Positions 26,145-52,465 of a stretch of 64,000 bases of DNA are shown here, in pieces; the first letter of the stretch is position 1, and each line of letters begins with the position of its first letter. Below the pieces are notes generated by a model that had not been told where the DNA came from, did not search any database, and saw only the letters and a list, made by a program, of their open reading frames with translations. The position numbers were made by a program, and so were the translations under genes. The stretch is from IMG/VR virus record IMGVR_UViG_3300029908_000004, positions 1-64,000 of that record, one strand, 5' to 3'.

Positions 26145-26347
26145 TGGTGCTCACGGCGAGATTCGAACTCGCGACCCACACATTAGATTGTGTGTCTAAG
26201 TAGCTATAACGCGCTTTCCTACACATTTCAGTGATAGGAGTTAATCCTATCTCGGTTACGATGTACCTTTCGGGGCCTCCGCAACTCACTACCTATGACG
26301 AGCTTCCTAAGTTTGCTCCGCTCTTTCCATTCTAAGCTATCGTGAAC
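26145..26347 (-). ncRNA. 203-nt tRNA-like RNA: acceptor, D and T arms intact, anticodon region replaced by a long insertion
   Basis: GTTCACG/CGTGAGC-A-CCA acceptor; GCTT..GAGC D arm; GCGAG-TTCGAAT-CTCGC T arm. Confidence 0.7.
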
Positions 26348-26983: not shown

Positions 26984-27366
26984 CTAGAAGTATTCTATTT
27001 TTATATTCTCTTGGGACATCATCTGGTCTACCTTCTTCCAGATTTCTTCATCAGTCATTTCTATGATAACATTACTTTGACCTAGTCTACGTGCTACTTC
27101 TATTTTATGCCAAGCTTTGAACGCAGAGGTATTAACACACTTAACGAACGCCTGTTCTTTGTTCTTGGCTTGGTCTCTACCATCTCTATGCTCAGCTGTT
27201 GCTCCAGAATCAATGTGGATACACCTTACACCATTCTGTTTGGCGTTTCTGTGAATATAGGTCTCCCGACCTAATGCTGACCGCCGTTACCGCCCGTGCA
27301 GAAAGTCTCAAAGGTAAAATCCTTGCGAGTGAGAGTAAATAATAGGTGCTTTTCTTTTTTAGACAT
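26984..27366 (-). CDS. GGQ peptide-release-factor-like protein (RF-1 domain, ArfB-like), interrupted by a 20-nt coding gap
   Basis: Frame 1, 27366-27274: MSKKEKHLLFTLTRKDFTFETFCTGGNGGQH then TAG. Frame 2 resumes at CAC 27253: HRNAKQNGVRCIHIDSGATAEHRDGRDQAKNKEQAF...IKIEYF*. The joined product would be 119 aa. Confidence 0.85.
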
Positions 27367-27949
27367 CTTGATTCCCCTTCTTGTGTTTAGCTAGGTAAGC
27401 AATGGCTTCTTCTAGGAGATGCTCATCTTCATTCAATAAACCTATGGCTGTGTTGCATTTGCTACATAGTAATCCTCTATGCTTCCCAGAGGAGTGGCAG
27501 TGATCCAGAGACAATCTAATCAATTTACCTTGTCTTGTCTTTGTTTCTTTCTCTTTACAGATAGCACACTTGCCTTCCTGTGCTTCATGAAGGTTATTAT
27601 ATTCCTGCCTTGTGACTCCGTACTTAGTTTTCAAGCAACTATTATAAGACTGCTCATATATCTTATCTTTGTTCTTGTGTCTGTTTCTAGTTGTTATCAG
27701 TCCTGTAGACTTGCTCCAGCAGGTTTTACAGATATGCCTTTTTCCTAATCTATCCCTCCGGTCGTAAAATTCACCTGATGTTTTATCAAGCTTGCATTTA
27801 GTACATATTCTTCCGGTTGGAGTTTCCAGTATAGATTTCTGGTATAGATTAAAGCAATTAGTAGAACAGAATGATTTACGGTTTGGTTTTATTTGACTGG
27901 GCTTCTTGGGGTGTACTTTCGTACAGTAGGTACATATTACATTCATCAT
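27359..27949 (-). mobile_element. Endonuclease VII-like HNH homing endonuclease gene (HEG3)
   Basis: LKTKYGVTRQEYNNLHEAQEGKCAIC...LSLDHCHSSGKHRGLLCSKCNTAIG; N-terminal zinc fingers. Confidence 0.9.
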
Positions 27950-29598: not shown

Positions 29599-29675
29599 TG
29601 GTGCCCATGACTAGATTCAAACTAGCACCCTCTGTCTTCGGAGGACAGTGCTCTATTCATTTGAGCTACACGGGC
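29599..29675 (-). tRNA. tRNA-Arg(CCG)
   Basis: CTGTC-CT CCG AA-GACAG; CCA. Confidence 0.92.
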
Positions 29676-31141: not shown

Positions 31142-31218
31142 TGGGAGCCCTAGTAGGATTCGAACCTACCTAATCCATCTACAGTAAACTGTTTAGGAAA
31201 CAGTGCTGGTATAGGGCC
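31142..31218 (-). tRNA. D-armless tRNA-Arg(CCT)-like RNA with a long variable region
   Basis: GGCCCTA/TAGGGCT acceptor; only TACCAGC before ACTGT-TT CCT AA-ACAGT; canonical T arm; CCA. Confidence 0.65.
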
Positions 31219-31867: not shown

Positions 31868-31953
31868 TGGTGCACGCAGGAGGACTCAAACCTCCGAAGG
31901 TCTAAGACCGACGGGTTTACAGCCCGTAGTAATTGTCGCTATACGATACGTGC
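31868..31953 (-). tRNA. tRNA-Tyr(GTA)
   Basis: ACGGG-CT GTA AA-CCCGT; long variable arm; CCA. Confidence 0.92.
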
Positions 31954-33001: not shown

Positions 33002-33078
33002 TGGAGTTCCCGGAGAGGCTCAAACTCTCAACCTAAGGGTTAGAAACCCTTTGCTCTGTTCAATTGAGCTACGGGAAC
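33002..33078 (-). tRNA. tRNA-Arg(TCT)
   Basis: AAGGG-TT TCT AA-CCCTT; CCA. Confidence 0.93.
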
Positions 33079-33862: not shown

Positions 33863-33889
33863 TGGCTCCGACTTAGGGATTCGAACCCC
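33863..33889 (-). pseudogene. Orphan tRNA 3' end (Gln-like)
   Basis: GGGGTTCGAATCCCTAAGTCGGAGCCA. Confidence 0.65.
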
Positions 33890-33900
33890 AATAAACAGCT

Positions 33901-37056: not shown

Positions 37057-37191
37057 GGATATAGTTTGAACAAGATGTTTTTCGATGCTACCATTACACC
37101 AAGCTGGCATAAATTATTAAATGGTGCCAGCCCTGGGATTTGAACCCAGACCCGTTCGTTATGAGTGAAGATAACCTTGCTCTGTCGACCC
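37057..37191 (-). ncRNA. YrlA-like Y RNA 1 (permuted tRNA-like domain)
   Basis: GGGTCGA-N8-GGTTATC, then T arm CTGGG-TTCAAAT-CCCAG, acceptor GGCTGGC/GCCAGCT closed by a loop, D arm GTGT-AATGGTA-GCAT, and 3' CTTGTTCAAACTATATCC pairing with the 5' end. Confidence 0.85.
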
Positions 37192-39127: not shown

Positions 39128-39156
39128 TGGCGGTAGAGAGGAGAGTCGAACTCCTA
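39128..39156 (-). pseudogene. Orphan tRNA 3' end (Ser-like, G73)
   Basis: TTAGGAGTTCGACTCTCCTCTCTACCGCCA, just downstream of tRNA-Ser(TGA). Confidence 0.6.
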
Positions 39157-39181: not shown

Positions 39182-39274
39182 TGGAGGAAGCGGTCCGATT
39201 CAAACGGACGGACCCCATCATTGGGCATCGGAAGTTTTCAGGACTTCTGCATTAGTTCGCTCTGCCACGCTTCC
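39182..39274 (-). tRNA. tRNA-Ser(TGA), C33 variant
   Basis: GAAGT-CC TGA AA-ACTTC; long variable arm; CCA. Confidence 0.87.
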
Positions 39275-39397: not shown

Positions 39398-39485
39398 TGG
39401 AGGAAGGAGAGGGAGTCAGACTCTCAAGTCCCTTACGGGCACCCTGAGTTTCTAGCTCAGTTGGCTTATCGATGCCTACCCTTCC
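39398..39485 (-). tRNA. tRNA-Ser(AGA)-like, degenerate D and T loops
   Basis: CTGAG-CT AGA AA-CTCAG; long variable arm; GGAAGGG/TCCTTCC-T-CCA. Confidence 0.6.
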
Positions 39486-39859
39486 TTTAATTCTAATTTC
39501 TTACAATTACATTCATTACATGCAGAATTATCATAATTATGAGACCAATAGAAATGTCCACAAATACATGTGTCTATTCCTATTGACATGAATGGTGTTA
39601 TTTGATGAAGAAGCACTTGATCTTGTTTCAAGAACCTATATAGAGAAGATCGCTTCTCTGTTCGACATCTTTTTGCATTAGGATTAAGTATTGTATGCAT
39701 CAAATCTAACAAATCTAATCCTAATGTTCTAGAACCACAGAACTTTTTATCCTTACTAACTTTCTTTAACAAGTGTAAGGCTAAAGTATCCCTGTCCTCT
39801 TGTGGTAATTGTATACGCTTCTGACTATAAAAATTCGCTAATATCTCTAATCTTTTCAT
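39476..39859 (-). CDS. Hypothetical protein (paralog of the ORF at 40414)
   Basis: LALHLL...TILNP...LKQDQVLLHQITPF...CICGH. Confidence 0.6.
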   Translation of the reverse strand: MKRLEILANFYSQKRIQLPQEDRDTLALHLLKKVSKDKKFCGSRTLGLDLLDLMHTILNPNAKRCRTEKRSSLYRFLKQDQVLLHQITPFMSIGIDTCICGHFYWSHNYDNSACNECNCKKLELKEG

Positions 39860-40167
39860 GGTGTTATAGATGTTATCTTTGGTAGAGTTGGTAGTTCTCT
39901 AGGTGATAGTGTTGGTAAACAAGGTTCATGTAATACTAATGTGGGCTGGATAAGGAGCGTCTTGTTCTTAGAGAATCGTTTGTAATATTCGATCCAAATA
40001 GCAGCATCCTGATTGGAACTTTCTAAAGCTGCATCCCAAACAAGGCTACATTCAGCCCAATGTCCGTGCCCAACGAACCCTGTGACACCTTCCATCCAAA
40101 CCACTCTGCACTTATTTTTGGCGAACGCAGAAGAACATAGTAGAAGTATAATTAATAGTTTTTTCAT
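39856..40167 (-). CDS. Secreted hypothetical protein
   Basis: Signal peptide MKKLLIILLLCSSAFA. Confidence 0.6.
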   Translation of the reverse strand: MKKLLIILLLCSSAFAKNKCRVVWMEGVTGFVGHGHWAECSLVWDAALESSNQDAAIWIEYYKRFSKNKTLLIQPTLVLHEPCLPTLSPRELPTLPKITSITP

Positions 40168-40493
40168 TTACTAGACCCTATCTTACAATCACAACCAAAT
40201 GTTTCTGGTTGTGATACCTCAGTTATGAAGCGGTCTGGGGCTCTTCTTGGTTTATCACATACCGAACAAACTTTTCCTGCTCCACAACAATCCTCGCAGG
40301 TAGTGGTCTTACCATGACAGTAGACACACACTTTTGTTGGTGGGAGTAACACGTCTAACTCATCTACTTGAATGGCAAGATTATCCAAAGTAATCCATTC
40401 ATTTTTGTCGTAGTTAGCAGGCCTCTCTGATGTACACCCACGAGCTTTCCCCCATAGATGTACTACTAAGCTGTGCATACTTTGTTTGTTCAT
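40164..40493 (-). CDS. Cys-rich hypothetical protein
   Basis: CVYCHG...CEDCCGAGKVCSVC. Confidence 0.55.
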   Translation of the reverse strand: MNKQSMHSLVVHLWGKARGCTSERPANYDKNEWITLDNLAIQVDELDVLLPPTKVCVYCHGKTTTCEDCCGAGKVCSVCDKPRRAPDRFITEVSQPETFGCDCKIGSSK

Positions 40494-40926
40494 GAGGTTT
40501 CTCCCTAGAACCCAGACTTGATTTTGAGCTCTTCACACTTACCCTTGGCTTTACCGCGTGTTCACAACCAGTGCACTTCCATTTTTTACCTATGTAATCA
40601 TGATTAAAGGATATATGCCCACATTCACAATATGGATCGTAATCACATATGAAAGGGCTTAGTTGTCCTAATAACACTGGGTCGTCTTTCTTTAGCTGAC
40701 GGATAAAGTTAGATTGTTTAAATAATAAAACTTTACTCTGTGTTGGATCTAGTATAGCCCTCGTCGTCTCTGCTAAGTCTTTTATAGAGGCGTTGGTGTC
40801 CCAGATATGCTCGTTGGTTAAAGACCACTTGAACAAGAATAACGCTAAGGCTTCCCTAAGTGCAGTGTCCATTACTATAGTCTGTTTACTATAGTCTTCC
40901 ATAATTTGTTGATATTTAGATTTCAT
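40414..40926 (-). CDS. Hypothetical protein (paralog of the ORF at 39476)
   Basis: ALALFL...AILDP...LKKDDPVLLGQLSPF...CECGH. Confidence 0.6.
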   Translation of the reverse strand: MKSKYQQIMEDYSKQTIVMDTALREALALFLFKWSLTNEHIWDTNASIKDLAETTRAILDPTQSKVLLFKQSNFIRQLKKDDPVLLGQLSPFICDYDPYCECGHISFNHDYIGKKWKCTGCEHAVKPRVSVKSSKSSLGSREKPHEQTKYAQLSSTSMGESSWVYIREAC

Positions 40927-40936
40927 AATATATGTT

Positions 40937-40966
40937 TGGAGCTATCGAAGAGTCTCGAACTCTTGA
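40937..40966 (-). pseudogene. Degenerate tRNA 3' part
   Basis: AAGAG-TTCGAGA-CTCTT-CGATAGC-T-CCA with no matching 5' acceptor or D arm. Confidence 0.5.
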
Positions 40967-41006
40967 GTTTTATTTGTAGATTAAAATTGTAGCTGAACTC
41001 CCTCAA

Positions 41007-41270
41007 CTATAAAACCATTATCTTGTCACATTCAGCTTTGTTCTTTTCTTCTTTTAGTCTTGCATCTTCTACAAGGAATGGAAGATATAATCGTTCGGCA
41101 TATTCTAGCTTAGCATTTAGCTGGGCTATTTTGTAGTTGTACGCCTCTACTTCAAGGATATCCGGGCCTACTACACTCCATGCACTAGGATTATATAATT
41201 CTCTTATTTCTTTACGACAGTTAACTATCGTTGTTCCTAATTCTTTTCTTATTGATTCAAGTGTCCACAT
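41007..41270 (-). CDS. Hypothetical protein
   Basis: 87-aa ORF. Confidence 0.55.
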   Translation of the reverse strand: MWTLESIRKELGTTIVNCRKEIRELYNPSAWSVVGPDILEVEAYNYKIAQLNAKLEYAERLYLPFLVEDARLKEEKNKAECDKIMVL

Positions 41271-41277
41271 ATATGTA

Positions 41278-41301
41278 TGGAGCTGAGAGTCGTGATTGAA
41301 C
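41278..41301 (-). pseudogene. Orphan tRNA 3' end (Thr-like)
   Basis: GTTCAATCACGACTCTCAGCTCCA, downstream of tRNA-Thr. Confidence 0.55.
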
Positions 41302-41319
41302 GGACGCTAGCTTATAAGT

Positions 41320-41394
41320 TGGAGCTACCAGAGAGATTTGAACTCCCGATTGACTGATTACAGATCAGTTGCTGTTCCACTGAGCCATGGTAGC
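41320..41394 (-). tRNA. tRNA-Thr(TGT), C33 variant
   Basis: ACTGA-TC TGT AA-TCAGT; GCTACCA/TGGTAGC-T-CCA. Confidence 0.82.
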
Positions 41395-41426
41395 TAATAA
41401 GACTTTCCTTTTGGTGACCGGTGGGT

Positions 41427-41448
41427 TGGGGTGCATGATGGGAGTCGA
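41427..41448 (-). pseudogene. 3' fragment of the original tRNA-His
   Basis: TCGACTCCCAT-CATGCAC-C-CCA pairs at all 8 positions (one G-U) with the 5' fragment GGTGCGTG at 42278-42285. Confidence 0.8.
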
Positions 41449-41488
41449 TTGACACTTTCGACTAAGTTATTCTATACTATATAGTTAT

Positions 41489-42154
41489 ATGATAACCCTA
41501 AGTATGGAACAATTTACCAAACTAAATAGTCGCTCACCAGTAGAATGTAAATGTGAACAATGTAACAGTCTTTTCTACAGAGTAAAACATGATTTACAGA
41601 CAGCTATTCGTAGGAAAGAACCAATATCATTTTGTTCGCCGAAGTGTTATGGTTTATACAGAAACACTAAGACTACTGTCAAATGTTTATGGTGTAAGTC
41701 TGAAGTAGTTAGAATACCAACTACTAAGAATGTCTTCTGTTCGAGATCGTGTTCTGCAAAATATAATAACACACATAAAACATTTGGGACTAGAAGATCG
41801 AAACTTGAGAGATTTCTAGAAGAACAAATAAAATTATCGTACCCCAATTTGGAGCTTATATGCAATAGCAAATCAGTCATCGGTTCAGAGTTAGATTTCT
41901 ATTTCCCGAGGCTCAGATTGGCGATAGAACTCAATGGTATTCTGCACTACGAACCAATCTATGGGACAGATAAATTCTCTAAAATTGTTGACAATGATAG
42001 ACAAAAAGTTAGATTATGTGAAGCTATGGGTATTGAGCTAGCAGTTATTAATTCTTCGTCATGTTCACGCATGAGCGCAGTATTTAAAACTAAGTATTTG
42101 GGGATAACACGTGAATTAATAGACTCTGTTATTGATAGAGGAAATTTGGGGTAG
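41489..42154 (+). mobile_element. Antisense PD-(D/E)XK/Vsr-like homing endonuclease gene with zinc fingers (HEG4)
   Basis: ELDFYFPRLRLAIELNGILHY; CSPKC/CSRSC repeats; TTGACA-18nt-TATACT promoter at 41449-41478. Confidence 0.8.
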
Positions 42155-42221
42155 ATAGAGAGGTTCAAACTCTCGCTAAGGGAGCCACAGACCCTCGTGC
42201 TTTCATTACACTATACCTACC
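42147..42221 (-). tRNA. tRNA-His(GTG), replacement copy
   Basis: G-1:C73; AGGGT-CT GTG GC-TCCCT; CCA. Confidence 0.88.
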
Positions 42222-42244
42222 ATACTAAAAACTCCGTCGTCAGA

Positions 42245-42285
42245 GGTGCCACAGACCAGCGCCTCACCGTTTGGCTTCACGCACC
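42245..42285 (-). pseudogene. 5' fragment of the original tRNA-His
   Basis: GGTGCGTGAAGCCAAACGGTGAGGCGCTGGTCTGTGGCACC. Confidence 0.8.
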
Positions 42286-42288
42286 ATG

Positions 42289-43393
42289 TTAATATTTTGA
42301 AAGTTGTTCCATATTTCTATGTACTATTGACTTATTTGTTAGTTTAACATAACAGTAACCCGGATTACTGGAATAGTACATAACCTTACCTACCCGACCC
42401 CTCAGATTATCATTGTCACCTATGAGTATTACGTCATCACTAATATTTAGCTTGGGGAGTATTGGATTAGTCCAAATTATTATACGATCAATGTTATACC
42501 TTTTTGGCAATGGAACTCAAATATTCTATACAATCTTTGTCAAGTTCTACTGCGTATTGATAAGCAAACAAAGCTAATACGTGGGACAGCCTTTGTTCAT
42601 TATCAGTCCCTTCATGTCTTATAACTAAATCCCTTATACCGCCTCGCTTTAAGAAAGATTCTGCTTCTTTTATTAACTTACCTTCTAAAACTGTGGTAGG
42701 AAATGGTTCGCCTAGTCTCCACATATCTATCCTATATTCTCTCCAGAAATTCTTCTGGGACACAATATACCTTTGAATTAAAGAATGCATCATAGTACTC
42801 AACATAATAGTTACAATTTAAGTTGATTGGACCATTGTATGTAGGAGAGTAGGTACGAGAACATATAATCTTTACTAGTGAGTGTGATGGTATTTGTGTA
42901 TATCCTGTTTTCGTTAACGCGAAGGCACCATAACGAAAGGGTTCAGGCTTGATTAATATACATATCCTATCCATGGCACGCCCTCTCTAACTGTTCAGCC
43001 GCCACCAAGAGACACCTTCCTGTCCGTAATTCTTCAATCAAGAAAAGAATATTACTAATACTATCATTGAGGGGAAATTGTACTATAAAAATACTGCCTT
43101 TATTAGGTCCACTTATAAAAGTTACTGCTTCTCCAGCTTCCAGTTTGGTAGGTCTTGGACCATTATATAAACAAATTCTATCCATATCACAATCTTTCTA
43201 TATACTTAGATGGAATAATATACCTCTGGCCATTTCTTATGATTTCACAGCATTCATCATTTAAATATATGAGGCCCTTTAGATAAATGTCTGTTATTAC
43301 CCCAGTAAATTCATAGCCAGATCCTGCTCGTACGTTTACTCTAAGACCAACTTCAAGATTCTTCGGTATATGCCAGATACACATACGGTCCAT
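42289..43393 (-). other. Tandem array of small DRIC/DRMC-motif paralogs (42289-42510, 42732-42974, 42967-43185, 43187-43393) plus an unrelated ORF at 42494-42805
   Basis: N-termini IDRIIIW, MDRICIL, MDRICLY and MDRMCIW; SH3/KOW-like beta pattern; ends E(Q)LS/LERI/LERA/IERL. Confidence 0.65.
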
Positions 43394-48929: not shown

Positions 48930-49260
48930 AGGTAGACCCTAACCCGGTTAATCAACTAAGAAGATTAACAATACGCTGGGGCAGAAACACTGGCTAGGCT
49001 GGAAATCATCCAGGCTGGCAGAGTGTCGATACCAACAGCGTTTACGTTAACAGTTTTGCCTGTTATTGTTGTATAGTCGTTTAACGTGAGCCTATAGCAC
49101 GACCTGTCATTATTTGCAATTCATACCAAGCGAACCCGGGAGCGGCCCCTATGGTGGACACTCGGGATTCAACCTCCGTGCCCTTATAATTGGTGGACCG
49201 CGAGGGAGTTGAACCCTCGTTAATGGTCATGCTTACAAATAAATCATACAGGTTTAACCG
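48930..49260 (-). ncRNA. ssrA: Circularly permuted two-piece tmRNA
   Basis: The acceptor piece (49260-49191: T arm GAGGG-TTCAACT-CCCTC, GCGGTCC-A-CCA) precedes the coding piece starting GGGCCGC at 49148 (G3:U70). Helix 2 TTGCAAATAA/TTATTTGTAA; pk1-like element; AATAACA-GGC resume context; tag ORF 49060-48965. Confidence 0.85.
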
Positions 49261-51368: not shown

Positions 51369-51899
51369 ATGCCAATTCGTAACTGTTTATATTGTAACAA
51401 ACTATTTGATGCTCCACAACGTGATATTACCAGAGGTAATGGTAAATACTGTTCCAGGAAATGCTCTGGAAACTATAAGAGCTCTCTTCCTAGTAAAGCT
51501 CCTATTATAGAGCTTACTTGTGCTTATTGTAATAGTACATTTACTAAGCCTTCCAGATACGTTAGAAAAGCCAATTCTAGAAGCGGATTGCGCTTTTGTA
51601 ACCGTAAGTGTAAAGAACTTGGACAGCGATTAGACGGTGGTAACATAAAAGCTATACAACCATCTCATTTTGGCACAGGTACCGGAGAACACCATTATAG
51701 AGCAAAAGCTCTAAACGCATTCCCAAATAAGTGTAATAGATGTGGATATGATGAATTAATAGGGATCCTTGTTGTACACCACAAGGATCGTAACCGTTCC
51801 AATTCTCATCTATCAAACTTAGAGATTCTGTGCCCAAATTGTCACGCTAAAGAACATTACATTAATCACGATGGATCGTATAGCTCAAAGAGAAAATGA
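51369..51899 (+). mobile_element. Antisense HNH homing endonuclease gene (HEG6)
   Basis: CNRCG...VHHKDRNRSNSHLSNLEILCPNCHAKEH; CSRKC repeats; promoter motif at 51256-51266. Confidence 0.9.
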
Positions 51900-52284: not shown

Positions 52285-52465
52285 AACTACGATTGTTTAC
52301 GTTAATCTCGGTGCTTTACCATTGAGCTACTCAGGCATATGTTTTGGGGCCCGAGGAGAGCATCGAACTCTCATACCCGATTTTGAAAGAAATCGTCTAC
52401 CAGATGTTGTTTCTACCAAGTGAACCTCTTGGGTAATAGATTAACGTTAAACTTAATCGTTTATT
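52285..52465 (-). ncRNA. Permuted tRNA-like RNA with a long closing stem and no GGGUCGA motif
   Basis: T arm GAGAG-TTCGATG-CTCTC, CTCGGGC-C-CCA, short linker, GCCTGAG, D arm GCTC-AATGGTA-AAGC; flanks ACGTTAATCT/AGATTAACGT pair. Confidence 0.7.

What the first reader, a model, noticed from the sequence alone, without database searches (positions are those of the whole stretch)
41427..42285. Endonuclease cassette that splits tRNA-His and supplies a new tRNA-His
Seen: the 5' fragment (42285-42245, GGTGCGTG...CTGTGGCACC) and the 3' fragment (41448-41427, ...CATGCAC-C-CCA) pair across all 8 acceptor positions, including G-1:C73. Between them lie a complete but sequence-divergent tRNA-His(GTG), an antisense Vsr/PD-(D/E)XK nuclease ORF overlapping its 3' end, and a TTGACA-18nt-TATACT promoter. 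Inference: an intron-less homing element targeting a tRNA gene and carrying its own immune replacement.
Basis: partly seen in the sequence, partly recalled or inferred. Interest (0 to 1): 0.74.

Follow-up and report, generated by a model that had tools for sequence, protein, structure and literature searches.

The report
Nuclease cassette that split tRNA-His
A selfish nuclease gene landed in the T-loop of a giant peat phage's histidine tRNA gene, leaving the old gene in two dead pieces and a different, intact tRNA-His in its place; the same kind of cassette, with the same scar, sits in tRNA clusters of dozens of other phages.

Summary
On the minus strand lie, in order:
- a 41-nt 5' remnant of a tRNA-His gene "A" (42285-42245);
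- a 23-nt spacer;
- a complete, unrelated tRNA-His(GTG) "B" (42221-42147; Rfam 50 bits);
- an antisense 221-aa nuclease gene (41489-42154, +) whose stop codon overlaps B's 3' end;
- a strong promoter-like site;
- the 22-nt 3' remnant of A (41448-41427).

The two remnants pair at all 8 acceptor positions. Positions 42-54 of A are missing.

The nuclease has two Cys4 modules and a Vsr/I-Bth0305I-like domain. It belongs to a large unannotated family. In 78 distinct phage loci, 70 copies lie within 1.5 kb of tRNA genes, and in 64 of these all the tRNAs are antisense.

The family has a hallmark: a ~20-nt tRNA 3' fragment that begins at T54 of the TψC loop and sits just upstream of the nuclease start. 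The window's 3' remnant starts at T55, one base off that position. One relative (L013) has the same layout of split tRNA plus replacement tRNA.

Best reading: a free-standing homing endonuclease cassette cuts tRNA genes in the T-loop, and here it invaded a divergent tRNA-His and dragged the donor's tRNA-His along. Cleavage, immunity of B, and an empty allele remain untested or unfound.

The parts
42245..42285 (-). 5' remnant of the resident tRNA-His gene 'A': G-1, acceptor 5' strand, D arm and anticodon arm (GTG), ending after position 41
   Evidence: Sequence read. Rfam truncated match to tRNA positions 1-40, 17.5 bits.
42222..42244 (-). 23-nt spacer between remnant A and tRNA-His B. With C42245 it forms a terminator-like hairpin followed by T5. 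Inferred to be donor flank carried in with B.
   Evidence: Its origin is an inference.
42147..42221 (-). Complete tRNA-His(GTG) 'B', with encoded G-1, C73 and CCA. T-loop TTTGAAC (U56). Unrelated in sequence to A outside the anticodon loop.
   Evidence: Rfam RF00005, 50 bits. Sequence. Not called by ARAGORN.
41489..42154 (+). Free-standing homing-endonuclease-like gene of 221 aa: two Cys4 zinc modules, a basic linker and a C-terminal Vsr/EDxHD-like nuclease domain. Its stop codon lies inside the acceptor stem of tRNA-His B.
   Evidence: PHROG 559/1271/3339/9084, annotated HNH or homing endonuclease. 489 homologues at E<=1e-5. Invariant residues from alignment A1. AF2 model pLDDT 88.9. Foldseek hits Vsr 1cw0 at E 2.6e-4 and I-Bth0305I 3r3p at TM 0.60.
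41449..41478 (+). Sigma-70-like promoter TTGACA-18-TATACT, 10 nt upstream of the nuclease ATG, implying a nearly leaderless mRNA
   Evidence: 11 of 12 matches. Relatives have -10-like boxes close to their ATG. Function not shown.
41443..41463 (.). Inverted repeat at the cassette junction, AGTCGA-(9 nt)-TCGACT. The distal arm is T-loop positions 55-60 of remnant A, and the loop holds the -35 box. Relatives have the equivalent TTCGAA-(8-10 nt)-TTCGA arrangement.
   Evidence: Any role as a nuclease binding site or operator is an inference.
41427..41448 (-). 3' remnant of tRNA-His 'A': T-loop positions 55-60, T-stem 3' strand, acceptor 3' strand, C73 and CCA. This is the family-typical displaced tRNA 3' fragment.
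   Evidence: Family comparison.
41320..41394 (-). tRNA-Thr(TGT), the unaffected next gene of the array. It marks the end of the disturbed region.

Best explanation
A free-standing homing endonuclease cassette, from a family that targets the T-psi-C loop of phage tRNA genes, invaded the resident tRNA-His gene (A) of this peat jumbo phage.

Proposed steps:
1. The nuclease cut A in or next to its T-loop.
2. The right-hand break end was kept, so A positions 55-76 survive directly beside the cassette's promoter end.
3. The left-hand end was resected to position 41.
4. Repair copied the donor through the nuclease gene, the donor's own tRNA-His (B) and 23 nt of its upstream flank. It then rejoined without homology, because A and B are too divergent to recombine inside the tRNA body.

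The outcome is a dead tRNA-His in two pieces around a working tRNA-His plus the nuclease gene.

Shown here: the anatomy; the nuclease fold with its family-invariant residues intact; the family's near-exclusive residence in tRNA arrays; the recurrent T54 breakpoint; and a second locus with the same layout.

Inferred: that the protein cleaves tRNA-gene DNA at the T-loop; that B arrived together with the nuclease gene; the order of repair events; and any immunity of B.
For: 1. Anatomy and acceptor pairing are confirmed, with 0.018 such pairings expected by chance.
2. B is the only tRNA-His in the 215-kb genome, so the phage's own tRNA-His supply depends on it.
3. The nuclease is Vsr/I-Bth0305I-like and carries every family-invariant residue: eight Cys, plus E134, D136, E147, N149, H153, D170 and K173.
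4. Of 78 distinct family loci, 70 have tRNAs within 1.5 kb, and in 64 of them all the tRNAs are antisense. In 40 loci an antisense tRNA's 3' end lies within -40 to +100 nt of the end of the nuclease homology.
5. A tRNA 3' fragment starting exactly at T54 lies upstream of the nuclease start.
   - 9 of 50 loci match at >=16 of 20 positions, against 0 of 50 controls. At least one of the nine (L052) may overlap an annotated upstream tRNA of the same amino acid.
6. In L052 and L076 the fragment differs in the T-stem from the current tRNA yet still pairs with that tRNA's 5' acceptor strand. Conversion tracts therefore reach 5' of position 54.
7. In L083 the tRNA is a dead chimera whose 5' acceptor pairs only with the displaced fragment.
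8. L013 repeats the window's layout. An old 5' piece pairs 7 of 7 with the displaced fragment, and between them lie a complete tRNA (Rfam 37.9 bits) and the nuclease gene.
9. There is a precedent: T4 SegB recognises the T-psi-C motif of tRNA genes and drives inheritance of the tRNA region (PMC2330249; motif RAWTSGAAC in PMC13096335).
10. In one metatranscriptome (X12), contigs cover 41337-42505 at word depth 3-12 while both flanks are near zero.
Against: - No HEG-less allele of this phage was found. Every contig that carries the flanking genes also carries the cassette. No relative closer than about 55% protein identity is sampled.
- No donor is known. The closest nuclease homologue is 57% identical.
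- In relatives with identical duplicates, the intact tRNA keeps the same 20 nt as the displaced fragment. How the element avoids cutting its own genome is unexplained.
- B's U56 T-loop is not unique in this phage.
- The left junction shows no homology, so an illegitimate join has to be assumed.
- A second RNA run (X20) shows no coverage of the nuclease body. Contig depth carries no strand information, and RNA libraries can hold DNA.
- Nuclease activity and target are inferred from junctions only.
Confidence: 0.75

Rival explanations
1. Two separate events. The cassette first sat in its ordinary family configuration next to an intact tRNA-His A, with a duplicated A 3' fragment upstream of the nuclease start. 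Later an unrelated recombination replaced A positions 42-76 with a spacer plus tRNA-His B.
For: The ordinary family configuration is an intact tRNA, the nuclease, then a duplicate of that tRNA's own 3' end. The window's tRNA array holds several other orphan tRNA 3' portions without a nuclease beside them, so tRNA replacement happens here by other routes too.
Against: It needs an extra event whose right-hand junction falls exactly at the nuclease stop codon. L013 shows the same combined layout independently. L052, L076 and L083 show that conversion tracts tied to the cassette do extend into the tRNA body.
Confidence: 0.13
2. The fragments are ordinary decay products or chance look-alikes. The nuclease gene merely sits in an intergenic gap of the tRNA array, with no causal link to them.
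For: The 5' piece alone scores only 17.5 bits, and the 3' piece gets no Rfam hit alone. Phage tRNA arrays hold many homing-endonuclease-like genes: an HNH gene at 51369-51899 and an EndoVII-like gene at 27359-27949 lie in this window.
Against: Eight of 8 acceptor pairs form, with 0.018 expected by chance. The 3' piece starts at T55, one base off the T54 position where the displaced fragments of at least 9 independent family members start, and at the same place relative to the nuclease start.
Confidence: 0.04
3. The split tRNA-His A is still functional, as an intron-containing, trans-spliced or permuted tRNA gene whose intervening sequence happens to hold B and the nuclease.
For: Group I introns do occur in tRNA genes next to family members: L011 has an RF00028 match of 62.8 bits. 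T-psi-C loops of tmRNA genes host group I introns (PMC11915505).
Against: Positions 42-54 of A are absent from both junctions: two anticodon-stem bases, the variable loop, the T-stem 5' strand and T54. Rfam finds no intron or ribozyme in 40900-42900 at E<=10. The ribozyme model R1 finds nothing in the window.
Confidence: 0.02
4. The cassette moves as an integrase- or transposase-type element that uses the tRNA T-loop as its attachment site, as genomic islands do. The Vsr-like protein would then play another role.
For: Direct repeats of a tRNA 3' end starting in the T-loop are the classic signature of integrase-mediated insertion (own knowledge: Williams 2002, Nucleic Acids Res, on sublocations in tRNA genes).
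Against: The roughly 0.8-kb cassette holds a single credible ORF, the nuclease. No integrase or transposase family matches it. The left junctions in the window, L013, L076 and L083 are variable, which fits break repair and not site-specific recombination.
Confidence: 0.03

Closest known systems
Phage T4 SegB, a GIY-YIG free-standing homing endonuclease in the tRNA gene cluster (PMC2330249; PMC13096335)
   Same: It is a free-standing nuclease gene inside a phage tRNA cluster. Its recognition site is centred on the conserved T-psi-C stem-loop motif of tRNA genes. It drives co-inheritance of neighbouring tRNA genes by break repair.
   Different: The nuclease fold is unrelated: GIY-YIG against Vsr-like with two Cys4 modules. 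No displaced tRNA 3' fragment, antisense tail-to-tail layout, ribozyme or split-plus-replacement scar has been described for SegB. SegB activity is proven, whereas activity here is only inferred.
EDxHD / Vsr-like homing endonucleases: I-Bth0305I and phage Hef (PMC3239194)
   Same: The catalytic domain has a Vsr-like fold (Foldseek 3r3p, TM 0.60). Conserved residues run in the same order, acid...D...N...H...D: here D136, N149, H153 and D170, against D196, N208, H213 and D222. Both are phage-borne.
   Different: There is no detectable sequence match to PDB chains or to Pfam. The N-terminal DNA-binding part is two Cys4 modules, not NUMOD/HTH. I-Bth0305I sits in a group I intron in recA, whereas this family sits free in tRNA arrays.
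Integrase-borne islands and prophages inserted in the T-loop sublocation of tRNA genes
   Same: The inserted DNA restores the tRNA and leaves a displaced copy of the tRNA's 3' end, starting in the T-loop.
   Different: No recombinase is present. The element is about 0.8 kb and lies in phage genomes. The junctions on the tRNA-body side vary.
Genes in pieces made by homing endonuclease insertion, e.g. mobE in Aeromonas phage Aeh1 nrdA (own knowledge: Friedrich et al. 2007, PNAS)
   Same: An intron-less endonuclease gene physically splits its target gene.
   Different: In that case the two pieces stay functional as a split protein. Here the split tRNA is dead and a second complete gene replaces it.
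Theta / HDV-like ribozymes at phage tRNA 3' ends (PMC10879173)
   Same: [quoted passage not shown]
   Different: This is not present in the window. The published work does not mention endonucleases or homing. Here 16 of 17 model hits touch a nuclease gene.

Membership tests
Free-standing (intron-less) homing endonuclease gene | Encodes a nuclease-fold protein with conserved catalytic residues intact | tested here: met
   Alignment A1 gives the invariant residues. AF2 model pLDDT 88.9. Foldseek hits Vsr, I-Bth0305I and PvuRts1I. PHROG families annotated as homing or HNH endonuclease.
Free-standing (intron-less) homing endonuclease gene | Not embedded in a self-splicing intron or an intein | tested here: met
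   No intron or ribozyme family matches in 40900-42900 at E<=10. The ORF stands alone with its own promoter-like site.
Free-standing (intron-less) homing endonuclease gene | Patchy presence or absence among otherwise collinear relatives | tested here: inconclusive
   All 19-24 contigs with the flanking genes carry the cassette. No closer relatives are sampled. At family level, paralogues sit at different tRNAs within single genomes.
Free-standing (intron-less) homing endonuclease gene | Site-specific cleavage of the endonuclease-less allele, followed by gene conversion | not testable with these tools
   Needs the protein and DNA substrates. Only the junction scars are available.
EDxHD / Vsr-like homing endonuclease family | Vsr-like alpha/beta catalytic fold | tested here: met
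   Foldseek: 1cw0_A at E 2.6e-4, 1vsr at E 2e-3, 3r3p at TM 0.60-0.61.
EDxHD / Vsr-like homing endonuclease family | Composite catalytic motif E...D...x...H...D | tested here: inconclusive
   Invariant E107/E134, D136, N149, H153 and D170 follow the order of E170, D196, N208, H213 and D222 of I-Bth0305I, with similar spacing. No residue-by-residue superposition was made, and no sequence-level match exists.
GIY-YIG Seg endonucleases (SegB) | GIY-YIG catalytic domain | tested here: not met
   No GIY-YIG match in Pfam, PHROGs or by fold. The resemblance is functional only.
Integrase-mediated tRNA T-loop insertion | Tyrosine or serine recombinase encoded by the element | tested here: not met
   The only credible ORF between the remnants is the nuclease.
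Functional split or intron-containing tRNA gene | All tRNA positions are present across the pieces, together with a splicing or joining device | tested here: not met
   Positions 42-54 are missing. No intron family matches.
HDV-like / theta ribozyme (related loci only) | Nested double pseudoknot with a catalytic C, and the cleavage site at the tRNA 3' end | tested here: inconclusive
   RF02682 matches of 40 and 35.9 bits fall below the gathering score of 44. P1, P2 and P3 with G1-U wobble and compensatory changes were read from alignment A3. The motif starts within 1-3 nt of the tRNA end. No cleavage has been tested.

The most novel reading that the evidence does not exclude
The Cys4-Vsr nuclease genes may define an undescribed class of composite mobile element of phage tRNA arrays. 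Such an element would insert at the T-stem/T-loop boundary (position 53/54) of a tRNA gene and carry its own repair kit for the damaged host gene. The kit is always a replacement tRNA 3' end. In one subfamily it also includes an HDV-like ribozyme that would recreate the tRNA's 3' terminus in front of the long antisense trailer. In heterologous jumps (this window, L013) it is a whole replacement tRNA. This would be a DNA-level analogue of the way introns and inteins make endonuclease insertions harmless.
Probability: 0.45. Interest if true: 0.82.

Novelty: new variant of a known kind. Interest (0 to 1): 0.7.

Why it matters
Homing endonucleases in phage tRNA clusters are known from T4 SegB, but how they reshape tRNA repertoires is poorly documented. 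This locus is a clean fossil of one event: a tRNA gene destroyed and replaced in a single cassette. Comparison with about 80 related loci turns it into a rule, with a fixed breakpoint at T54, displaced 3' fragments, chimeric tRNAs and associated HDV-like ribozymes.

If the family works as inferred, three things follow:
- It offers one route by which tRNA genes are exchanged, duplicated and pseudogenised in phage arrays.
- It gives a likely reason why some published "theta" ribozymes sit behind phage tRNAs.
- It provides a new set of nucleases whose targets can be read from their scars.

It also warns annotators: tRNA finders missed the functional tRNA-His here and would miss the remnants.

Tried and rejected
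Searches for an empty allele or an intact A-type tRNA-His:
- Exact 41-nt and 32-nt patterns of A, and a gapped acceptor pattern, in IMG/VR found only the same phage.
- Flanking proteins found only the same phage (ORF73; the AAA ATPase).
- All contigs that carry the exact flanking ORF87 or the nuclease hold the cassette.
- The nearest AAA-ATPase relatives are at most 55% identical and either not collinear or without DNA on file.
- Read laying on two DNA and two RNA peat runs showed no joint that skips the cassette.
- The loose ends in X13 and X14 led to another phage's tRNA-His (L039-L041). It shares only about 85% of the D and anticodon arms, so it is not an ancestor of A.
- An empty-site pattern for relative L057 found nothing.

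Other dead ends:
- INPHARED blastn found only a tRNA-Thr match.
- The second IMG/VR contig is 99.99% identical, which makes it the same phage and uninformative.
- Pfam and PDB sequence searches of the nuclease gave nothing significant.

Ideas rejected:
- B's U56 T-loop as an immunity mark. Four other tRNAs of this phage have it.
- Simple TTCRA motif counts as a statistic. The motif is too common in AT-rich DNA: 53 loci upstream of the nuclease start against 36 inside the ORF. The argument therefore rests on exact duplicates and acceptor pairing.
- Complex prediction was not used, because it gives no verdict for protein-DNA pairs.

Full report
**Setting.** The window is the first 64 kb of a 215,291-bp IMG/VR virus record from a peat metagenome. 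From about 24 to 65 kb the minus strand carries a tRNA array. ARAGORN tRNAs, and Rfam adds more. All of them encode CCA. Small ORFs and several homing-endonuclease-like genes lie between them.

**The observation.** Read on the minus strand, the region holds these elements:

| Coordinates | Strand | Element |
|---|---|---|
| 42285-42245 | - | 41-nt tRNA 5' part: G-1, acceptor strand, D arm, anticodon arm with GTG, ending after position 41 |
| 42244-42222 | - | 23-nt spacer, forming a weak terminator-like hairpin plus T5 |
| 42221-42147 | - | complete tRNA-His(GTG) with G-1, C73 and CCA |
| 41489-42154 | + | 221-codon ORF whose stop codon lies in that tRNA's acceptor stem |
| 41449-41478 | + | TTGACA-18-TATACT |
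| 41448-41427 | - | 22 nt: T-loop 55-60, T-stem 3' strand, acceptor 3' strand, C73, CCA |

- Rfam finds the complete tRNA at 50 bits, although ARAGORN misses it. It is the only tRNA-His in the genome.
- The 5' piece, searched as a cut stretch, aligns to tRNA model positions 1-40 (17.5 bits).
- The two pieces form seven Watson-Crick pairs and one G-U, across -1:73 and 1:72 to 7:66. Only 17 octamers in the whole genome could do so, which gives 0.018 expected in the relevant 450 nt.
- Positions 42-54 are absent and no intron-like RNA is detected. The old gene (A) is therefore dead.
- A and the complete gene (B) share only the anticodon-loop region. B is therefore not a recent copy of A.

**The protein.** Pfam and PDB sequence searches give nothing significant. 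PHROG profiles annotated as HNH or homing endonuclease match it. A search of 5.8 billion proteins finds 489 homologues at E<=1e-5, almost all unnamed, with a few called very-short-patch-repair endonuclease. An alignment of 40 of them shows these invariants:
- eight cysteines in two CxxC...C...C modules;
- a basic linker;
- E134, D136, E147, N149, H153, D170 and K173 in the C-terminal domain.

The AlphaFold model (pLDDT 88.9) matches Vsr (1cw0, E 2.6e-4), PvuRts1I and the catalytic domain of the homing endonuclease I-Bth0305I (3r3p, TM 0.60). The order and spacing of D136, N149, H153 and D170 mirror D196, N208, H213 and D222 of I-Bth0305I. I read this as a distinct branch of the Vsr-like (EDxHD-type) nucleases with a new zinc-module DNA-binding part. 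Membership rests on fold, not on sequence.

**The family lives in tRNA arrays.** Two IMG/VR scans and three look-ups of exact proteins gave 78 distinct loci.
- In 70 loci a tRNA lies within 1.5 kb.
- In 64 of these, all the tRNAs are antisense to the nuclease gene.
- In 40 loci an antisense tRNA's 3' end lies within -40 to +100 nt of the end of the nuclease homology.
- Several phages carry two copies at different tRNAs.

**The hallmark scar.** In tRNA orientation, a short AT-rich promoter region follows the nuclease start. After it, many loci show about 20 nt that read as T-loop, T-stem 3' strand, acceptor 3' strand and discriminator. This stretch begins exactly at T54.

| Class | Loci | What is seen |
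|---|---|---|
| Diverged fragment | L052, L076 | T-stem differs from the present tRNA, yet the fragment still pairs with that tRNA's 5' acceptor strand |
| Dead chimera | L083 | the tRNA's 5' acceptor pairs only with the displaced fragment |
| Split plus replacement | L013 and the window | old 5' piece, complete tRNA, nuclease, old 3' piece |

- Overall, 9 of 50 loci match at >=16 of 20 positions against 0 of 50 controls taken inside the ORF. At least one of the nine (L052) may overlap an annotated upstream tRNA-Thr.
- In L052 and L076 the T-arm of the present tRNA must itself have been replaced.
- In L013 the old 5' piece (acceptor plus D arm) pairs 7 of 7 with the displaced fragment. Between them lie a complete tRNA (37.9 bits, with a 56-nt insert in the anticodon loop) and the nuclease gene.
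- The window's 3' remnant begins at T55, one base off the family position, preceded by the family-typical second TCGA about 9 nt away. In the window this gives the palindrome AGTCGA-N9-TCGACT, which encloses the -35 box.

**Interpretation.** A fixed breakpoint on one side and variable tracts on the other are what a double-strand break in the T-loop, repaired from an element-bearing donor, would leave. When donor and recipient carry the same tRNA, the product is an intact tRNA, the cassette, and a displaced 3' end. In the window the recipient's tRNA-His A and the donor's tRNA-His B were too different to recombine within the gene. Copying therefore ran through B and 23 nt beyond it, and was joined illegitimately to A at position 41.

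The closest functional precedent is T4 SegB. Its 27-bp site is centred on the T-psi-C motif, and it drives inheritance of the T4 tRNA region (PMC2330249; cleavage motif RAWTSGAAC in PMC13096335). The fold differs here, and the scar has not been described. Full-text searches that combined homing endonuclease, tRNA genes, T-loop and phage, or added HDV-like ribozyme, found nothing that describes it.

**What is not shown.**
- No cleavage has been tested.
- No empty allele or donor was found.
- Immunity of B is untested. Its U56 T-loop, paired with a D-loop that lacks GG, also occurs in tRNA-Arg(CCG), tRNA-Arg(TCT), tRNA-Tyr and tRNA-Ser(TGA) of this phage.
- It is unexplained how elements with identical duplicates avoid cutting their own intact tRNA. 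A recognition site longer than the 20-nt repeat and spanning both its ends would solve this, but that is conjecture.
- Expression evidence is weak. One metatranscriptome has contigs over 41337-42505 at depth 3-12 with empty flanks, and another lacks the nuclease body.

**Rivals.**
- A two-step history, with the ordinary cassette beside A and a later swap for B, cannot be excluded. It needs an extra event that ends exactly at the stop codon.
- Chance or simple decay is contradicted by the pairing statistics and by the near-coincidence with the family breakpoint (T55 against T54).
- A functional split tRNA is excluded by the missing 13 positions.
- An integrase-type element is excluded by the absence of any recombinase in the 0.8-kb cassette.

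**Side finding.** In at least 14 related loci, the 70 nt between the tRNA and the nuclease stop form a conserved HDV-like nested pseudoknot. It has P1 with G1-U wobble, a GTTAAC P2 and a CAC/GTG P3 with compensatory changes.
- Rfam's HDV-F-prausnitzii model scores 40 and 35.9 bits, below its threshold of 44.
- A model built from 12 copies finds 17 sites in 436 kb that hold 343 ARAGORN-called tRNAs. Sixteen of the 17 touch a nuclease stop (12 are training copies and 4 are new), and one lies elsewhere. There are none in the window.
- The paper that defined tRNA-associated theta ribozymes does not mention endonucleases.
- If the ribozyme travels with the nuclease gene, it would restore the tRNA's 3' end ahead of the antisense trailer.

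**Other remnants.** The window's array also holds seven further orphan units of T-arm, acceptor strand and CCA outside any called tRNA. tRNA replacement seems to be frequent in this genome.

Noticed in passing
Related loci, e.g. L087:2141-2210(-), L071:2147-2216(-), L100:2153-2222(-), L113:2153-2222(-): A conserved ~70-nt HDV-like (theta-type) ribozyme motif sits exactly between a tRNA 3' end and the stop codon of the antisense nuclease gene. Of 17 hits of a purpose-built model in 436 kb, 16 abut a nuclease stop. Rfam RF02682 scores are below threshold (40 and 35.9 bits against 44). There are none in the window.
   Followed up: partly
window 26145-26172, 33863-33890, 37122-37149, 39128-39155, 40937-40964, 49191-49218, 52345-52372 (all - strand): Seven orphan units of T-arm, acceptor 3' strand, discriminator and CCA lie inside the tRNA array but outside any called tRNA. 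Most have no matching 5' acceptor strand within 130 nt. None occurs outside the array. They are probably remnants of earlier tRNA replacements. The unit at 33863-33890 resembles the 3' end of tRNA-Gln(CTG), and the one at 52345-52372 has a His-like C73.
   Followed up: partly
window 51369-51899 (+) and 27359-27949 (-): Two further homing-endonuclease-like genes lie in the same array. One is an HNH gene that starts 6 nt from the 5' end of tRNA-Ala(TGC). The other is an endonuclease VII-like gene.
   Followed up: no
window 29599-29675, 31868-31953, 33002-33078, 39182-39274, 42147-42221 (-): Five tRNAs of this phage have a TTTGA T-loop (U56 in place of the near-universal C56). Those inspected also have D-loops without the usual GG, which suggests a covarying 19:56 tertiary pair. 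This may be why ARAGORN misses tRNA-His B.
   Followed up: partly
window 31145-31218 (-): An extra weak tRNA-like match (Rfam 29.4 bits) that ARAGORN does not call. It has discriminator C and an odd anticodon region.
   Followed up: no
L040:902-977 (also L039, L041), another peat phage with 17-20 tightly packed tRNAs: A tRNA-His(GTG) with two U-U mismatches in the middle of the acceptor stem, T at -1 and T73. It shares about 85% of its D and anticodon arms with remnant A.
   Followed up: no
L011:4723-4920(-) and L013:4582-4701(-): The family nuclease abuts a tRNA with a group I intron in L011 (RF00028, 62.8 bits). In L013 it abuts a tRNA with a 56-nt insert in the anticodon loop.
   Followed up: no
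L083:2197-2270(-): A chimeric, probably dead tRNA(CAT). Its 5' acceptor strand ACCGATA does not pair with its present 3' strand TACCCCA, but it pairs perfectly with the displaced fragment upstream of the nuclease start.
   Followed up: yes
window 42732-43393 (-) and 39476-40926 (-): There are tandem small paralogous ORFs. Three consecutive genes start MDRIC or MDRMC. Two genes share a CxCGH...C motif region. Function unknown.
   Followed up: no
window 41337-42505, RNA run X12: In one peat metatranscriptome, the contigs cover the cassette at word depth 3-12 while both flanks are near zero. In a second RNA run the pattern is the reverse.
   Followed up: partly
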